Shown here piece by piece: positions 1 through 39,712 of a stretch of DNA of 64,000 bases. Origin of the DNA: Phallusia mammillata. Its lineage: Eukaryota. Position 1 is the first letter of the stretch. Every line of letters starts with the position of its first letter. A program made the position numbers and the translations under genes. The DNA is taken from contig OZ281496.1 in assembly GCA_965637545.1 (NCBI GenBank), positions 8,370,001 through 8,434,000 on the forward strand. Reading direction: 5' to 3'. The notes under the pieces were generated by a model. That model was not told the origin of the DNA and made no database searches. It saw only the letters and a list, made by a program, of their open reading frames with translations.

Positions 1-1978
1 ATAACAAGAAAATCCGTAAGTCAACCGTGGCATATAGGATCAAATGGGAGGCTTTGGAAGACAAAGAAGTAAGAAAGAAGTTTGCATCGAGCATGTCATC
101 AAAGTTCAGACAACTTCCAGATGTATCTGAGGACATTGAGATGGAATGGGAATCATTCAAAACAGCCATAATTTCTTCTGCTGCGGAAAGTTGCGGGCGA
201 AAACGACTCAGAGTAACGAAGAACAAAAAGAAAACACCTTGGTGGAATGAGGATGTGAAACAAGTGATTAGTGCAAAGAAGGAGGCTTATAGGGCTTTGT
301 TGCAACACAGGTCTTCATCTGAATTACAATCGCGTTACTCGGAAGCGCGGAGAGCTGCCACTTTAGCAGTTAAAAAGTCCAAAGAGAAATCTTGGGAGGA
401 GTTTGGTCGACAGTTGGATTCCAACTACACATCGGCAAATAAAGTATTTTGGCAGACCATACGCCGTTTGCGTGGTAAGAGATCAAATGCCACAAGCTAC
501 ATCAAAGACACAAATGGAAACATCCTTCGTGAAGAAAGGGATATACTTGCACGATGGAGAGAATACTTTAAAGACCTTTTGAACCCAGTAAAGGCAACGC
601 CAATTGATACACAGCAAATAGTCCAACCAGGAGAAGAGGAAGTCTTCACAGCAGTCGAAGTTGCAATAGCAGTACGAGGGCTAAAATCCGGAAAGGCAGC
701 TGGTGAAGATGAAATCCGACCTGAAATGTTGAAAGCTCTTGGACGGGAAGGAATTCTGTGGTTAACACAAGTGTGTCAAGTGGCGTGGAAACTTGGCAAG
801 ACACCTAAAGACTGGCAAACGGGCGTAGTTATTCCCATTTTTAAAAAAGGCGATCGTAAGGAATGCACGAACTACAGAGGAATATCGTTGCTTAGTTTGC
901 CAGGAAAGGTGTATGCCAAATGCCTTGAACGAAAATGCCGAGAAATAGTGGAAACAAAACTGGAGGAGGGCCAGTGTGGTTTTCGTCCTGGTCGCAGCAC
1001 TACGGACCAAATCTTCACATTGAAGCAAGTCTTCGAGAAATCATGGGAATATGCCAAAGACGTATTCGCATGTTTCGTCGACCTTGAGAAGGCATTTGAT
1101 CGGATTCCTCGAGAAAAGCTTTGGGGAGTACTACAGGAACATGGCATCAATGGCCAGCTGTTGCTGGCCATAAAATCATTTTACAATCAGCCCGAGGTTT
1201 GTGTTCGCGTGAACGGCAAACAAACTAAACCATTCCATGTGGGGGTTGGTCTTCGGCAAGGATGTGTATTGTCACCACTCCTTTTCGTTATCTACATGAA
1301 CTGGATTGACAAGTGCAGCCTAACTGATGATTGTGTCACGATTGGAAGCTTTAAAATTAGTCGTTTGCTTTTTGCAGTGATGGGAGACAAGACACCGAAA
1401 TTGATTTTAGAACTGGAAAAGCAAGCTCTGTGATAAGGGCATTGCAGCTTTCGGTTGTCATGAAACGAGAATTGTCAAAGAAGGCAAAGATGGCGATATT
1501 TAAAACCATCTTCATTCCCATACTCACTTATGGTCATGAGGCGTGGATCATGACCGAGAAGGTGCGATCACAACTACAAGCATCTGAAATGAGGTTTTTG
1601 CGTAGGGTTGAACGGGTTACTTTACTTGACAAAGTACGTAGCTCCGAAATCCGCAAATCTCTAAGCGTCGATCCTCTACTTCTCAAAATCGAACGATCCC
1701 AGCTGAAATGGTTTGGCCATGTTAACAGAATGCCTCAGAAAAGGCTTCCCAAACAATCTCTGTTTGCAAAACCAAAAGGGAAGCGGCCCACTGGACGACC
1801 TCGAACTCGATGGTTAGATCAAGTTAAAAGCCTGGCCTGGAATCCCTTGGGAATTTATCCGGATGAACTGAAGGAAGTGGTGACTGACCGTGAAGTGTGG
1901 AGGCTCAATCTTGAGCTGCTGCCCCCGCGACCCTCAAAAGGATTAAGCGGGAAAGAAAAATGATGAATGATGATGATT
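1..1978 (+). mobile_element. RTE-clade non-LTR retrotransposon (LINE), 3' part; runs off the left edge of the window
   Basis: ORF 27-1433 carries RT motifs (KAAGED, DWQTGVVIPIFKKGD, NYRGISLL, QCGFRPGRSTTDQIF, FVDLEKAFD, GLRQGCVLSPLLF). ORF 1430-1963 matches the typical RTE C-terminus (KRELSKKAK...LTYGHEAW...SEMRFLRR...LKWFGHV...GRPRTRW). It ends in a short (TGA)n tail at about 1961-1978. Confidence 0.93.
27..1963 (+). pseudogene. Reverse transcriptase ORF of the RTE element, inactivated by an internal deletion with frameshift
   Basis: At about 1375 the RT reads ...SRLLFA and then jumps, in another frame, to SDGRQDTEIDFRTGKASSVIRAL. The catalytic DD of FADD and the following RT segment are missing. 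Confidence 0.85.
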
Positions 1979-2088: not shown

Positions 2089-5000
2089 TTAACAGCAGGA
2101 CACATTGCGTAGACGCTCCCAGTTCTTCCATAAGCACGAAACTGAACAAAACCGGTCGGTAGAGGTTTTACACTTGGTGGCAACATCGAGTTAACCACTG
2201 AATCGTTTCCGATTGAAAATTGAACTGGTACCGAAAGCACGTCATCATCATACAAGCAATCTGGACCTGAAACAACAAGCTTTTTCAAATTGTTGTAAAG
2301 CATAAGTTCTCAGTTACATCAAATTATTTACTCACAAAAGTCAGTTTCTGTAATGATTTCCAATATTTTGTACGTTGCAGCTTTAATCTCAGTTTCGGTT
2401 ATTAAAACTCCATTTCTCCTACCAATTAAAATCGATTTTAGAAAAGTATTTTATTACAATGTTTGTTAGTACAATGCCAAACCCTTCCTATTACCTTGAA
2501 ATCATTGTGTAACCAAAAACTATATTTGATACAGCATTTTTAATTGACCATTCGAAAAAATAACTATTGCCGACGGGGTTGTATAAACTGATAATAGGCG
2601 TTCCAGATGATTTCCAAAGCTAAAAAGAAAAAAGTTAGAAATAAAAAAAATACTAAGTTTTTATTAAGTTATATCTTTTATTTATATAGGCAATCTTATA
2701 ATATTTGTTTAGAAGAAAATAATGCAGGAAATATTTTCGTCTATGCTATCAAATTCAGAATTTGCAAATGTGTGTAAACTGCAGTGTAACTCAAGTAACA
2801 ATTACCAAAAACAATTTTTAGTTTTTTATTGATTATCAGAAATTAATCGACAATCTTTTGGCTTTAAAATAAATTTGAAGGTACGTATTAAAAACAATTC
2901 CAGTCACAACTGTATTATATTACCTGCGTAAACTCCGTGACTTGAAACTATCTACTGATATTAGGTAAAACAAAGGTAAAACGTACCTCTGGATTATTGA
3001 CATAAAACCAAACATCACACAAGCTGGCATATGACGTTCCATTTCTACATTGTGATTGAAAATGCAAAAAGAAATCGTTGATAGTGTGGTTTCCCTCGTA
3101 GAGAACTACTGAATCAGTTACTGGTCTTTGACTGTATAACTAAAACGAACAAAGTTTAAATGGATAATTGAAAAATGTCATAACGCAGTATAAACGTACT
3201 TCGAAATTCATGTAATCAAAACAGTGGTCAAAATTTCCGATACCAAACAAAGCAAAAAAGGGACGCATTTTTCGACTTGAACTCATTATGTTTCCAATGC
3301 CGCATCTTTTACAGTTGATTATTTAGTTAAATTTTAACAACAAAAAAATTGCAATTTAAACATACGTAGCATCCAAATCATAATACACATAACGATTATA
3401 ATGATCAGAACAATCTATTTGATATTCGTATGGATAATTGCAACGATGTCTTGTGTAGAATCTGACCTGAACAAACACTTTTGTTATAATTTCCTTGATC
3501 ATATCAGAATGGCAATAGCATACCCTCATTCCGTAATTGTTTCCAAACAATTGACTATCATCCATCAAATAAGAATGAGAACCATAGTTGTAAAAATAGA
3601 AATCAGTAATTAAACTCGTGATTTCTGTGGATTTTTTCTCAAGTCGATTCAACATTGAATTCACATCAGGATAAAAAACTTTAAGCAAACATAAAACTTG
3701 CTTTAGTTTAGAGCGAATTAATTTACCAAATTTGGGAAGATTCCCTGCATACGTTTTTTAGAGTTCAACCGCAGGCTAATATACACTTACTGTTAAAATA
3801 CAGAAATTCATACATAATTATTTAGCAATTGGGACTTTCAACATTTATACTTTAGTGCACTTTAAAGGCAATCAGTAATGCTGAGAGGTACATAATCTTA
3901 TATTTGCAAAAGCTACATTTAAGGGTATTTCTTACCATTCTTGGAACTTATTTGATATCGAGAATTAAACATTTTTTGCATATTTCCTCCATAAAATTGC
4001 ATAAATCCGTTCTCTGTTTGATATTGCAAAAAACTTTGCTCTCTGCTGATCTCTAGTGGTGTTTGGTTTAAAACATGACGTAACATAACATCTTTTCCCT
4101 GAAATTGATTTCTCCATTGTAAAAAATGGGTTAAGTCACTTTTTATCAATATTTGCCTGATATTCAAAATAAGCTTGACTTTTAAAATCTGATCGTGTAC
4201 AAGTAGAAAATGTTCCAAATGCGTTTGTGTTCATCCAATTTTGGTAATCTGGAATTCAAGAAGCACGTAAAATGTTTTCTTGCATTAGTACAATATAACT
4301 TACCTATAATATTATCGTTGTTGTTTGACGATGTAACAAACCACAAATCACTATAACTTTCTTCTAAACTTAAATCATTGTCGTTGATAGTTGCAGCGAG
4401 AATCCATCCACCACCAGCAGCAACCATGTCACAGTAAACCTGTAAACAAAACTCGTTCGTAAGAGTACATTTGTTATTCTAAAAGTTGCAATGATGTCAT
4501 TGATGGATTGTCAGAAAAAAAAGACAGACCATCTTTTTTTACATTAAAGGCAGAATTCTCGTTAAAGGCAAAATTGTAAACAACTCTCAGTACGCCAGGC
4601 CCAGTGAAGGCCTTTCACCGACTTAGCCGGTCACCAGATATTTTCCACATAGATTTTTCGGTATAACGCCAACAATAGGCCTGGCGTGCTGTCATTTATA
4701 TATGTGTGTGCCGTGATTGCTGGTGTGCATGAACGCTTCCGGGCTGGTCTGCAATCAAGTAAACATCGTCATAAAATATAATTCCACACCTCAAACGATT
4801 TGAGTGACGGTTGTATGACGTAAATTCCATCTTTGAAGCCTGTGTCTCTCAGTTGAATACATGAACGAGCAGGATTTGGGAAAGTACCGAGCGGTGATTT
4901 TGTTGTCTCAGATTCTGTTGTGTTCAGAGTTGTTTGTCCTGTTGTCGGCGGTGCTGAGCAATACAGAAATTAGATTAAATATATCCTTTATTCATGCAAA

Positions 5001-6293
5001 ACTACGACAACTTTGTCTAAGTGGCTCCTTCAGCAAATTTTTTATTCAGTTGTGTTTACAGTTGTTTGTCCAGTTGCCTGTGGTGCTGAGCAATAGAAAC
5101 ACTATTTTTAATGAAACTTTTAGTTCTACAACACTGCACTAACTTTATTTAAGTTTTCAACCTCCCGTAATTATACTTGGAAAGTCTTTTATTCTTACAT
5201 TTGTGTCAAAAAGAAACATATAAGACTTACATTTAGATTAAAATGTTTGATAACAGCTGACTGCATAATGACTGGTTAATATTTTTTGGATATGTTTAAA
5301 CCCAAACATTTATTTTCAGTCAAGCTTAAAGTTAAAAACGTTTACAAAAATCAGTCTGAAGTACTCGTCAGAAACTCGATTATGGTTTATGACTTACTGT
5401 GATCAGTTGCTTCGTCTAAGTTCTGAAACAATAAAACGTGCAGTTTGCAGTCAAACGCAACAAGTGTAACAAGTTAACTGCACCTGTTTTCCTGTGAAAT
5501 TGAGTATCCCGAAAACTAGACCCAAAGCAGCCAGAATACCAACTGCGCACACCAAGACTACAATCCAGTTTGATGTGTTTGGTTTTGCAAAAAAAATTCT
5601 TGGACATTTTTTACCTGACTGCGTGTCGACAGTTTCTGTATAAAATAGAAGTCATTGTTTCTCTAAACGTAGCCTCTCCACCACAAAAAAACAGGAACTT
5701 TGTTGCATTAAAACCTATTGAAATAGGATTAGACTTAAAAATAAACTGTTTGAAATAAATTAACTGAGTTTGCAGGAGAAAACTGTTTTTTTTTGCGCTA
5801 CAGTGGTCATAAATGATGCAACAACCGTAGTTTAAACACAGTTTAAAGATTTGTTTGGTAGCACTCAACACAGATTTAAATGTACTGCGAGTTTTTTTTT
5901 TTATCAAGCATTTACAAAACAACTTACCAGAACTGTGTACAGTTTTAGGTGTTGGTGTTGTTTTAATGGATTCTTCATATACGTCTGTGGAAGATTCCAC
6001 GTACACATTTGAGAAGGGCCCCTGTCGTTCTGGTTTGAAGGGGAAAAGTCACAGTAAATATTCGAGAGTAAGTATTTGTGGTTTGTGTTATGTTTCGACA
6101 AACATTTTAAATATGTTACACAGCATTTTGGACAGATGTAAACAAAAAAATTGAAGAGATTTTTTGCAAAGTTAAAAATATCCTTTAAAATATTACCTCG
6201 TTTCTTTCTGTTTGCTGCAGGCTGGTAACGACCTTGTTTGATCTCAATAGTTTCGTAGTCACCAGCATCGTTGTTCACATAAGTATGAGCCAT
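2089..6293 (-). CDS. Type II transmembrane intelectin-like (fibrinogen-related) protein; spliced, with the 3' exons beyond the LINE and outside the window
   Basis: Phase-consistent exons in transcript order: 6293-6197, 6029-5928, 5635-5484, 5422-5398, 4953-4790, 4439-4304, 4248-4157, 4098-3936, 3678-3524, 3139-2987, 2619-2495, 2418-2336, 2266-2089; GT-AG introns except one GC-AG. The product contains the TM helix WIVVLVCAVGILAALGLVFGILNF and a Thr-rich stalk. It then reads NPARSCIQLRDTGFKDGIYVIQPSLKSFEVYCDMVAAGGGWILAA, NWMNTNAFGT...SDFKSQAYFEYQGKDVMLRHV...FLQYQTENGFM and VPVQFSIGND...TGFVQFRAY...AMCPAVK, which align by eye with the intelectin consensus (FCDM..GGGW; NWANYNTFG..SDDYKNPGYYDIQAKDL; AGFVQFRVF..ALC). 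Confidence 0.85.
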
Positions 6294-7139: not shown

Positions 7140-8260
7140 GTTTGTTAGGGTCGTAAAAATCTCCGTACTTGTATATTTTGCTGTTTCGCGTTGGGTTTTT
7201 GTGTACGAATTGTGTCTCGTACAATACAAACCCAAGTTAGTTTAAACCAGTCTAGTAATCCTGCTAATGTTATGTTTAAAATCCAAGTGTTGGTAAAAGT
7301 TATGTTACAGAATATGGCGCAAACGCTTGCTACTAACAAACTTTGAAATGCAAAAACTAACAAATAGCAAACGCAAAAAGGGAACCTGTGGGTGTGTGAT
7401 TGTATGACTATTTTTAACAGCATTGTTTCAAGTAAATAAACTGTTTCTGCCAGGCAAATTTGTAGCACTTCCAGTAGCTACCACTGCGCTTTTTGTGTCT
7501 CATCGCCCTTGTTGCTTTGTAGCAACTCTGTGTTTTCAATTTATATCACTGATGATGGTGTCTCGTATGGGACATCGAAATGTCGGCATATTATCAGAAA
7601 AACTGCTGGAAGAACTACAAGTTTGTTAAGTGTTTCTTCGGGCATTTAGCAATATAATAAAACGTTGTTGCTATTTACAACTGCTCAGAATATCCTTCTG
7701 CCTGCAACCGATAATGGGAACTGCCCCAATCTTTGAAATTTTTGACATTGTCGTAAAATTCTATGCAACACCAAGCTTCATGTTCAGAGGAACCGCTTAG
7801 TCTCATCATCGCAGTTCAGTCTGACATACTTGGATGACGTTTTCAAGATATTTACAAAAGATTCCTACAGGAAAAAATATTCATCTTGAACTAACAGCTT
7901 GACGACAAACACGACCTAGCGTCTTGAGAAATTTGCTTCTATATTTTAAAAAAAGTAGAGATTATGATTTCGATTCTTCATGTAGACAGACAGCATTGTT
8001 ACAAAACCAATACACTGTTACATGTTTAAGTTTATTACTACGTGATCAGGTTGCTTTTTTGAATGAGTTGCATCTAAACCCAACATAACGCAGCTTTACT
8101 GGACAAAACTTCAGCACTACGCAACTACTCAAATATACCGCTAGGTGGGATAAAGAGAGTCCAAAGCTCAAATCAAGATACTACTCATCCTGGAGCACTC
8201 ACAATAAAAGCTTAGCAAAGTTGATATTATGCATTCTTCTTTAGTTTTTTTACATTTTGC
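7140..8260 (+). pseudogene. Possible decayed leucine-rich-repeat gene fragment
   Basis: GNLWVCDC at 7380-7403 followed by ...QICST resembles an LRRCT cap. Scattered LRR-like strings (LPQSLKFLTLS*N at about 7720-7760, HVQRNRL, LNELHLN) are broken by stops and frameshifts. Confidence 0.3.
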
Positions 8261-39512: not shown

Positions 39513-39712
39513 NNNNNNNNNNNNNNNNNNNNNNNNNNNNNNNNNNNNNNNNNNNNNNNNNNNNNNNNNNNNNNNNNNNNNNNNNNNNNNNNNNNNNNNN
39601 NNNNNNNNNNNNNNNNNNNNNNNNNNNNNNNNNNNNNNNNNNNNNNNNNNNNNNNNNNNNNNNNNNNNNNNNNNNNNNNNNNNNNNNNNNNNNNNNNNNN
39701 NNNNNNNNNNNN
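39513..39712. other. Assembly gap (200 N) flanked by a 484-bp direct overlap
   Basis: 39029-39512 is repeated at 39713-40196. Confidence 0.95.

What the first reader, a model, noticed from the sequence alone, without database searches (positions are those of the whole stretch)
2336..3678. A 172-aa, four-exon domain of unknown type inserted in frame inside the intelectin fold
Four exons (3678-3524, 3139-2987, 2619-2495, 2418-2336; 155+153+125+83 = 516 nt) chain with canonical GT-AG sites and matching phases (1-0-0-2-1) and no stop codons. They sit between ...RYQISSKN and CPDCLYDDDVLSVPV, two segments that are contiguous in canonical intelectins (YPVKYG..KC...GP.IPV). The insert reads VFYPDVNSMLNRLEKKSTEITSLITDFYFYNYGSHSYLMDDSQLFGNNYGMRLYSQRPVTDSVVLYEGNHTINDFFLHFQSQCRNGTSYASLCDVWFYVNNPELWKSSGTPIISLYNPVGNSYFFEWSIKNAVSNIVFGYTMISRRNGVLITETEIKAATYKILEIITETDF. 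It is aromatic-rich with two Cys and looks like a folded domain. As a phase 1-1 module it could be skipped wholesale to restore a canonical lectin domain. The ORF track shows only its first exon. I do not recognise the domain.
Basis: partly seen in the sequence, partly recalled or inferred. Interest (0 to 1): 0.82.

Follow-up and report, generated by a model that had tools for sequence, protein, structure and literature searches.

The report
Extra domain nested inside sea-squirt intelectin
A sea-squirt gene for a membrane-anchored relative of the sugar-binding protein intelectin has one surface loop replaced by a whole extra, conserved beta-sandwich domain of about 240 residues; the module is real and shared with Ciona, but it has six exons rather than the four reported, and its function is untested.

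Summary
The chain is incomplete. The module is therefore six exons, 723 nt and 241 aa, still phase 1 to phase 1.

The core reading holds. The flanking exons match Xenopus lectin XEEL at residues 121-165 and 175-229, so the module replaces a loop of about 9 residues.

The same module sits at the same site in two Phallusia mammillata proteins and in at least ten Ciona intestinalis genes, all named only "uncharacterized protein". Exon phases match in Ciona. dN/dS among three Ciona copies is 0.53-0.62 in the module and 0.23-0.29 in the host part.

RNA-type contigs of paralogues are spliced with the module kept. No transcript of this copy was seen, and no isoform skips the module.

The gene's 3' end leaves the window behind a LINE element. 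I found no paper on the family. The scan has noted it on other stretches of this genome.

The parts
5484..5635 (-). Exon with the single transmembrane segment (type II anchor); upstream exons for the tyrosine-bearing tail reach to about 6293. This belongs to the neighbouring finding and is only outlined here.
   Evidence: Reading; tblastn of P0001 residues 71-114 on 5621-5478.
4790..4953 (-). Exon: end of the Thr-rich stalk and start of the intelectin/fibrinogen-like domain.
   Evidence: AG/GT sites and open frame; 85% identical to P0001 184-222.
4304..4439 (-). Host exon with the CDM..GGGW motif of fibrinogen-related and intelectin domains.
   Evidence: Pfam Fibrinogen_C, weak, E 0.014; tblastn of P0001.
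4157..4248 (-). Host exon of 92 nt, the same length as in Ciona. Its donor is GC (CAG|GCAAAT), not GT.
   Evidence: Ciona exon of 92 nt.
3936..4098 (-). Last host exon before the module; ends in phase 1.
   Evidence: phmmer against PDB: XEEL 121-165, E 1.3e-6.
3524..3678 (-).
3366..3466 (-).
   Evidence: tblastn of P0001 and P0002; AG/GT sites; Ciona exon structure.
3200..3305 (-).
   Evidence: Ciona exon of 103 nt with the same phases.
2987..3139 (-).
   Evidence: (phmmer hits P0001 and P0002).
2495..2619 (-).
   Evidence: The RNA-type contig X5 record 23 ends its match exactly at 2495 and runs on into the next exon.
2336..2418 (-).
   Evidence: The paralogue contig reads ..NF|CPDC.. with no intron (table 5c).
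2092..2266 (-). Host exon after the module. It ends at donor AA|GTGAGT, at the same position and phase as the Ciona donor. If unspliced, the frame reads AAG TGA (stop at 2090-2088).
   Evidence: XEEL 175-229; 88% identical to the end of P0004; Ciona donor AA|GTATGT.
27..1963 (+). LINE-type reverse-transcriptase ORFs on the opposite strand, lying in what should be the next intron. They separate the gene from any further exons, which would lie outside the window.
   Evidence: ORFs; Pfam RVT_1, E 3.5e-25; no C-terminal intelectin exon found in the window.

Best explanation
This is one copy of a large ascidian gene family. The family encodes type II membrane proteins whose outer part is an intelectin-like (fibrinogen-related, X-type lectin) domain. 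One short surface loop of that domain, between the YP..K.G.G and C...VPV segments, is replaced by a complete extra domain.

In this copy the extra domain is encoded by six exons (3678-2336, 723 nt, 241 aa) bounded by phase-1 introns. It predates the split of Ciona and Phallusia, is kept under purifying selection, and is spliced into mRNA in paralogues. All of this is shown.

The domain is predicted to be a nine- to ten-strand beta sandwich. Two short N-terminal helices and one long C-terminal helix would bring its two ends together at the host loop (predicted).

My inferred mechanism is that the sandwich is a second, faster-evolving binding surface. It is probably for glycans or other microbial or cell-surface ligands, on a cell-surface receptor that signals through the tyrosine motifs of its short cytoplasmic tail. 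The canonical calcium and diol site of intelectin is altered in the Ciona members. For this copy it cannot be seen, because the last exons lie beyond a LINE insertion and the window edge.

My odds: a real conserved nested domain, about 0.9. This particular copy being an expressed, intact gene, about 0.5. A ligand-binding role for the module, about 0.35.
For: - Exons, splice sites and open 11-exon chain.
- Two extra exons found by homology.
- Nested position: P0005 matches XEEL and intelectin-1 in two blocks either side of residues 253-490. The window's own flanking exons match XEEL 121-165 and 175-229.
- Family: two Phallusia mammillata proteins and at least ten Ciona intestinalis genes carry the module, with 29 invariant columns over 10 sequences.
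- Exon lengths are 161/53/103/153/128/86 nt in Ciona and 155/101/106/153/125/83 nt here, with identical phases.
- dN/dS is 0.53-0.62 in the module and 0.23-0.29 in the host part, at dS 0.33-0.49.
- The window copy against P0004 is 70% identical in the host N part, 53% in the module and 88% in the host C part.
- Spliced RNA-type contigs of paralogues keep the module (X5 record 23, X4 record 17).
- Depth in the same-species DNA run is about 260 in introns but 2,500 to 139,000 over exons, module exons included. This points to many paralogues.
- The module is not an internal duplication of the host domain.
Against: - No transcript of this very copy was seen. All RNA-type contigs match at 90-95% and so come from paralogues, and the runs are only guessed to be RNA.
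- This copy has a GC donor at 4156 and a LINE directly downstream. Its last two expected exons are not in the window, so it may be truncated.
- P0004 also ends at the same ...CPAVK. That could reflect intron retention or a real short form.
- No sequence-level relative outside ascidians was found in my searches.
- Function is entirely inferred. A higher dN/dS could reflect relaxed constraint rather than diversifying selection.
Confidence: 0.72

Rival explanations
1. This window copy is a dead or truncated family member. The LINE insertion and loss of the last two exons cut off the C-terminal third of the lectin domain, and the open frame merely reflects recent duplication.
For: LINE reverse transcriptase lies at 27-1963, right after the last exon. 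No C-terminal exon is in the window. There is a GC donor at 4156. No contig of this exact copy appears in RNA-type runs. Earlier notes on this genome speak of decayed copies beside intact ones.
Against: Eleven exons are open over 484 codons, with ten canonical donors and a tolerable GC donor. The donor AA|GTGAGT is kept at the Ciona position. A LINE in an intron need not harm a gene. The missing exons may simply lie beyond the window edge.
Confidence: 0.4
2. The module is a structural spacer or oligomerisation piece, not a binding site. It holds or orients the intelectin part, as the supersandwich domains of many glycoside hydrolases mainly build the dimer and the rim of the active site.
For: The closest solved look-alikes are accessory domains of enzymes rather than free-standing lectins. 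The helices at both ends look like a stalk.
Against: The module evolves about twice as fast as the host at non-synonymous sites. It is the most divergent part between paralogues. Length changes concentrate in one Cys/Tyr-rich exon. That pattern is more usual for recognition surfaces than for scaffolds.
Confidence: 0.25
3. One reading: a four-exon, 172-aa insert, with exons 3466-3366 and 3305-3200 skipped in this copy, or the whole module skipped in a canonical-lectin isoform.
For: Both shortcuts keep the frame (207 nt and 723 nt are multiples of three). One paralogue contig (X4 record 17) spans the module in about 570 nt instead of 723, so shorter forms of the module exist in the family.
Against: Every homologue, from mRNA-derived or RefSeq models, contains the two segments, including the invariant S-R-K-x-x-P-F motif. 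Both exons have good AG/GT sites. No listed isoform skips the module. No contig joins 3936 to 2266 or 3524 to 3139.
Confidence: 0.07

Closest known systems
Intelectins / X-type lectins (human intelectin-1, PDB 4WMY; Xenopus XEEL, PDB 4WN0)
   Same: The host domain aligns over both halves (P0005 against XEEL E 5e-46; window exons). It has the CDM..GGGW fibrinogen-like start and the FVQFR segment.
   Different: Known intelectins are secreted, about 300 aa, and have a continuous lectin domain. This family is membrane-anchored (type II) and has a 230-240 aa domain in place of a loop of about 9 residues. In the Ciona members, the positions aligned with the calcium and ligand residues that I recall for human intelectin-1 (Asn260, Glu262, His263, Glu274; recalled from Wesener et al. 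2015, which I could not open) read Asp, Gln, Tyr and a gap (alignment). In this copy that part is not in the window.
Supersandwich (galactose-mutarotase-like) domains of glycoside hydrolases, glycan phosphorylases and polysaccharide lyases (e.g. GH65 7FE3, kojibiose phosphorylase 3WIQ, heparinase III 4FNV)
   Different: Sequence identity is only 3-12% and Foldseek finds no significant hit. Those domains are parts of bacterial and eukaryotic enzymes, not inserts in lectins. Shared ancestry is not shown.
Unnamed proteins of phages and other viruses in BFVD (A0A8S0HZG8; A0A6J5PYY2 and A0A6J5NIC1 of uncultured Caudovirales phages)
   Same: These are the best fold matches anywhere: E 2.1e-6 with TM 0.66 over 241 columns, and E about 1e-4 with TM 0.51.
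   Different: Both sides are predicted models, with 10-15% identity. There was no hit by sequence in PHROGs, IMG/VR or GenBank phages. The library holds only viruses, so it cannot show that the relatives are only viral.
Type II lectin receptors with tyrosine motifs in the tail (e.g. Dectin-1 or CLEC-2 among C-type lectins)
   Same: The overall layout is alike: a short N-terminal cytoplasmic tail with Y-x-x-I motifs, one membrane span, a stalk and a lectin-like head. This is an analogy only, drawn from general knowledge.
   Different: The head fold is unrelated (intelectin, not C-type). Signalling is untested.

Membership tests
Intelectin (X-type lectin) domain | Fibrinogen-related N-terminal segment with the C-D-M-x-x-x-G-G-G-W motif | tested here: met
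   Exon 4439-4304 carries the motif. Pfam Fibrinogen_C gives E 0.014 on the exon alone and 1.5e-8 on the homologue P0005.
Intelectin (X-type lectin) domain | Intelectin-specific middle and C-terminal segments alignable to solved intelectins | tested here: met
   Window exons match XEEL 121-165 (E 1.3e-6) and 175-229 (E 0.07). P0005 matches in two blocks with E 5e-46.
Intelectin (X-type lectin) domain | Uninterrupted lectin domain of about 270 residues | tested here: not met
   241 aa (window) or 238 aa (P0005 253-490) are inserted between XEEL positions 168 and 177.
Intelectin (X-type lectin) domain | Calcium-coordinating and ligand residues of the exocyclic-diol site (C-terminal third) | tested here: inconclusive
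   For this copy the exons are not in the window. In Ciona P0005 the aligned positions differ (C-D-G-Q-Y-V-C against C-N-V-E-H-H-C of XEEL, and the P-E segment is gapped). The residue roles are recalled from the literature, not re-derived here.
Intelectin (X-type lectin) domain | Secreted, soluble oligomer | tested here: not met
   A hydrophobic span of about 23 residues lies after an N-terminal tail with no signal peptide, in the window and in P0001, P0004 and the Ciona proteins. Topology is inferred, not measured.
Reeler / reelin N-terminal domain (label that UniProt gives to F7AL57, a fragment equal to the module) | Match to the family's sequence profile | tested here: not met
   Pfam gives no Reeler hit at E up to 10 for any of 10 module sequences. 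The module profile finds no PDB chain at E up to 10. The PROSITE profile behind the label could not be run.
Galactose-mutarotase-like supersandwich | Fold-level superposition over most of the domain | tested here: inconclusive
Exon-shuffled mobile module | Symmetric intron phases at both borders (1-1) | tested here: met
   Phase 1 at 3936/3678 and at 2336/2266; the same holds in Ciona. The same module in other host proteins was sought but not found.

The most novel reading that the evidence does not exclude
The nested domain is a glycan-binding sandwich of viral or bacterial type. It was captured once, as a phase 1-1 module, into a loop of an intelectin in the ascidian lineage. This created a two-headed, membrane-bound, rapidly diversifying receptor family that ascidians use for microbial or self/non-self recognition. 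It would be an invertebrate-chordate counterpart of diversified innate receptors, built on a fold not known to do this.
Probability: 0.15. Interest if true: 0.8.

Novelty: new variant of a known kind. Interest (0 to 1): 0.62.

Why it matters
Intelectins are studied as secreted lectins that tell microbial from host glycans through a single calcium site. This looks like a branch of the family in the closest invertebrate relatives of vertebrates. It is anchored in the membrane, carries a whole second domain inside the lectin fold, has an altered canonical site in Ciona, and is expanded to many copies.

That gives a clean natural case of domain-in-domain insertion with conserved introns. It also gives a candidate diversified receptor family in animals that lack adaptive immunity. 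The Ciona members are tractable: a model organism, RefSeq models at hand, and ectodomains that can be expressed for glycan arrays and structure determination.

The public records call these genes only "uncharacterized protein", and I found no paper on them.

Tried and rejected
- Pfam on single exons and on ten whole modules: nothing for the module.
- PHROGs: nothing below E 0.07.
- Module profile against all PDB sequences: no hit at E up to 10.
- IMG/VR pattern scan: 95 pattern matches, none confirmed.
- tblastn against GenBank phages: nothing at E up to 1.
- ESM Atlas by shape: TM 0.43 at best.
- ESM Atlas by features: unnamed cnidarian clusters at 0.94 with no ids to test. Intelectin clusters also appear, so the part-query probably leaks host features. 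I did not use this result.
- Internal duplication of the host domain: rejected, hhalign probability under 1%.
- 'Reelin domain' label of UniProt F7AL57: not reproduced.
- Skipping isoform: not seen in contigs or listed isoforms.
- phmmer with the 51-aa exon against 1.84 billion representatives found only two true hits and missed the Ciona family. Absence of hits from that search says little about wider distribution.
- Exact look-ups of P0004, P0002 and P0007 in assemblies found nothing.
- The spliced protein of this window has no reference id, so I did not hand it to the search or folding tools. Homologues with ids and single exons by reference were used instead.

Full report
**What is in the sequence**

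The gene lies on the minus strand. They sum to 516 nt and give the quoted peptide in one frame without a stop. Upstream exon 4098-3936 ends in phase 1 and downstream exon 2266-2092 begins in phase 1.

As single-exon queries, these flanking exons match the solved Xenopus intelectin XEEL. The upstream exon matches residues 121-165 (E 1.3e-6). The downstream exon matches residues 175-229 (E 0.07, weak alone but in register).

**The chain is incomplete**

A phmmer search with exon 2987-3139 against 1.84 billion representative proteins gave two true hits, P0001 (582 aa) and P0002 (166 aa).

With splice sites these stretches are exons 3466-3366 (101 nt) and 3305-3200 (106 nt). Both have AG/GT sites and phases 0 to 2 to 0. 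Together they make 207 nt, which is why leaving them out did not break the frame.

The module is thus six exons, 723 nt and 241 aa. An 11-exon chain from 4953 to 2091 is open over 484 codons. One donor, at 4156, is GC rather than GT.

**It is a conserved family, not a quirk of this locus**

P0001 and P0004 are Phallusia mammillata proteins named only "uncharacterized protein". Ciona intestinalis has at least ten genes with the same module at the same place: LOC100185179, LOC100179075, LOC108950076, LOC104266703, LOC100183495, LOC100182049, LOC108949836, LOC100183062, LOC144747153 and LOC144745788.

The Ciona protein P0005 aligns to XEEL and human intelectin-1 in two blocks. Residues 99-252 match chain positions 14-168 and residues 491-605 match 177-289 (E 5e-46). 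Residues 253-490 are unmatched. The module therefore replaces a loop of about nine residues.

Across ten module sequences, 29 columns are invariant. These include an S-R-K-x-x-P-F motif, an N-F-x-L-x-Y-x-A-x-C stretch with a second Cys ten residues later, and Y-x-M-x-x-R.

I mapped three Ciona genes exon by exon on their genomic loci. The module exons there are 161, 53, 103, 153, 128 and 86 nt, against 155, 101, 106, 153, 125 and 83 nt here. Every phase is the same, and phase-1 introns lie on both sides. The module with its introns therefore predates the split of these two ascidian genera.

**Selection**

Among three Ciona paralogues, dS is 0.33-0.49. dN/dS is 0.23-0.29 in the host N-terminal part and 0.53-0.62 in the first four module exons. 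The module is under constraint but changes about twice as fast as the host.

The window copy compared with P0004 is 70% identical in the host N part, 53% in the module and 88% in the host C part. Length variation concentrates in module exon 2, which is 53 nt in Ciona and 101 nt here, with extra cysteines in Phallusia.

**Expression**

No indexed RNA run holds this copy. Laying contigs of one DNA run and three runs guessed to be RNA, all of the same species label, gave two useful records.

- X5 record 23 (406 nt) matches 2535-2495, stops exactly at the exon end, then continues through about 100 nt into 2252-2137. The letters at the junction read ..N-F-C-P-D-C.. with neither intron present. This is a spliced paralogue transcript keeping module exons 5 and 6.
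- X4 record 17 (1229 nt) covers 2091-2268, 2998-3031 and 3581-3685. About 570 nt lie between the module borders, against 1,413 nt of genome. This is a spliced paralogue with a somewhat shorter module.

All such contigs are 90-95% alike to the window, so they are not this copy.

In the DNA run, intron depth is about 260. Exon bins reach 2,500 to 139,000, module exons included. This suggests many paralogues, although the tool warns that summed depth is not a copy number.

None of the RefSeq isoforms I listed skips the module. The shorter ones are cut at the N-terminus or stop at the insertion point.

**The 3' end**

The last in-window exon ends ...C-P-A-V-K, followed by GTGAGT. The donor AA|GT sits at the same position and phase as in Ciona, where two more exons (89 and 101 nt) finish the lectin domain. 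If the donor is not used, the frame reads AAG TGA.

P0004 ends at this very lysine, which could be intron retention. In the window the next about 120 nt run into a LINE element on the other strand (ORFs 27-1963, RVT_1 E 3.5e-25). No C-terminal exon is found anywhere in the window.

Whether this copy is complete cannot be decided from this window.

**Fold**

With a 12-sequence alignment, AlphaFold modelled the Ciona ectodomain poorly in the intelectin parts but confidently in the module (pLDDT 65-94 over construct residues 169-392). The module alone gave pLDDT 72.6 and pTM 0.79. It has two short helices, about nine long strands and a 17-residue C-terminal helix.

- Foldseek finds nothing significant in the PDB.
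- Foldseek does find matches in the viral model library. A0A8S0HZG8 gives E 2.1e-6 and TM 0.66 over 241 columns. Two proteins of uncultured Caudovirales phages give E about 1e-4 and TM 0.51.
- By sequence I found no relative in Pfam, PHROGs, PDB, IMG/VR or GenBank phages.
- The module is not a duplicate of the host domain.
- UniProt names a Ciona fragment that equals the module (F7AL57) "Reelin domain-containing protein". I could not reproduce this with Pfam or PDB profiles.

**How it probably works**

Shown: a real, conserved, spliced, nested domain in a membrane-anchored intelectin-like family.

Predicted: a beta sandwich whose two ends meet at the host loop.

Inferred: the sandwich is a second recognition surface on a receptor. 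This rests on four points:
- It evolves faster than the host.
- It varies in length in one Cys/Tyr-rich exon.
- It resembles carbohydrate-handling domains.
- The Ciona members have changed the positions aligned with the calcium-site residues of intelectin-1 (residue roles recalled from Wesener et al. 2015, which I could not open).

The tail with Y-x-x-I motifs and the membrane span suggest signalling, but nothing here tests it.

**Earlier notes of this scan**

After I had found the six exons, I looked up the scan's notes. The same family has been noted on several other stretches of this genome. Notes include a "six-exon, 237-codon module flanked by phase-1 introns" and a follow-up that called the module virus-like.

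My exon count agrees with the first. My viral-library fold hits partly agree with the second. My sequence searches in viral collections found nothing, and a viral-only library cannot show that relatives are only viral.

**Novelty and verdict**

The genes are in public annotation without a name. Four literature searches found no description. This is a new variant of a known kind: an intelectin with a nested domain and a membrane anchor.

The window copy itself adds one more, possibly truncated, member.

Noticed in passing
window 7680-7881 (-): A full-length match to U3 small nucleolar RNA (Rfam RF00012, 39.6 bits against a gathering score of 34, E 3e-6), about 1.4 kb upstream of the gene's first coding exon.
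   Followed up: no
window 27-1963 (+): Two adjoining ORFs (468 and 177 aa) of a LINE-type retrotransposon with a reverse-transcriptase domain. G+C is 44% against 32% next door. The element runs off the window start and sits in the expected last-but-one intron of the lectin gene.
   Followed up: partly
window about 4560-4770 (-), inside the intron between exons 4790 and 4439: A G+C-richer stretch that is highly repeated in the genome (DNA-run depth about 14,500 against 260). It appears as short contigs in the RNA-type runs and is probably a SINE-like repeat.
   Followed up: no
window about 5045-5090 (-): A decayed second copy of the Thr-rich stalk-repeat exon (S-T-T-G-N-W-T-N-N...) that runs into a stop. 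Phallusia P0001 has three such repeats in its stalk, so stalk length varies between copies.
   Followed up: no
window 4155-4156 (-): The donor of exon 4248-4157 is GC (CAG|GCAAAT). It is either a rare GC-AG intron or a weakened splice site in this copy.
   Followed up: no
L002 3001-6029 and L003 3001-6060 (Ciona intestinalis): Two Ciona family members (LOC144747153, LOC144745788) are annotated as ending inside the module, after its fourth exon, by read-through into the intron. They are either truncated copies or model errors.
   Followed up: partly
L001 1-600 and 9680-10319 (Ciona intestinalis): The Ciona gene LOC104266703 has near-identical neighbours on both sides. The last two exons of one copy lie upstream and the first two exons of another lie downstream, so the family is tandemly arrayed in Ciona too.
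   Followed up: no
P0020 (UniProt F7AL57, Ciona): This 180-aa database fragment is exactly the module and carries the automatic name 'Reelin domain-containing protein'. Neither Pfam nor PDB profiles support the name here.
   Followed up: partly
window 39513-39712: A run of 200 N (assembly gap or masked) inside the region that another note calls an 18-kb quasi-palindrome. I left it untouched.
   Followed up: no
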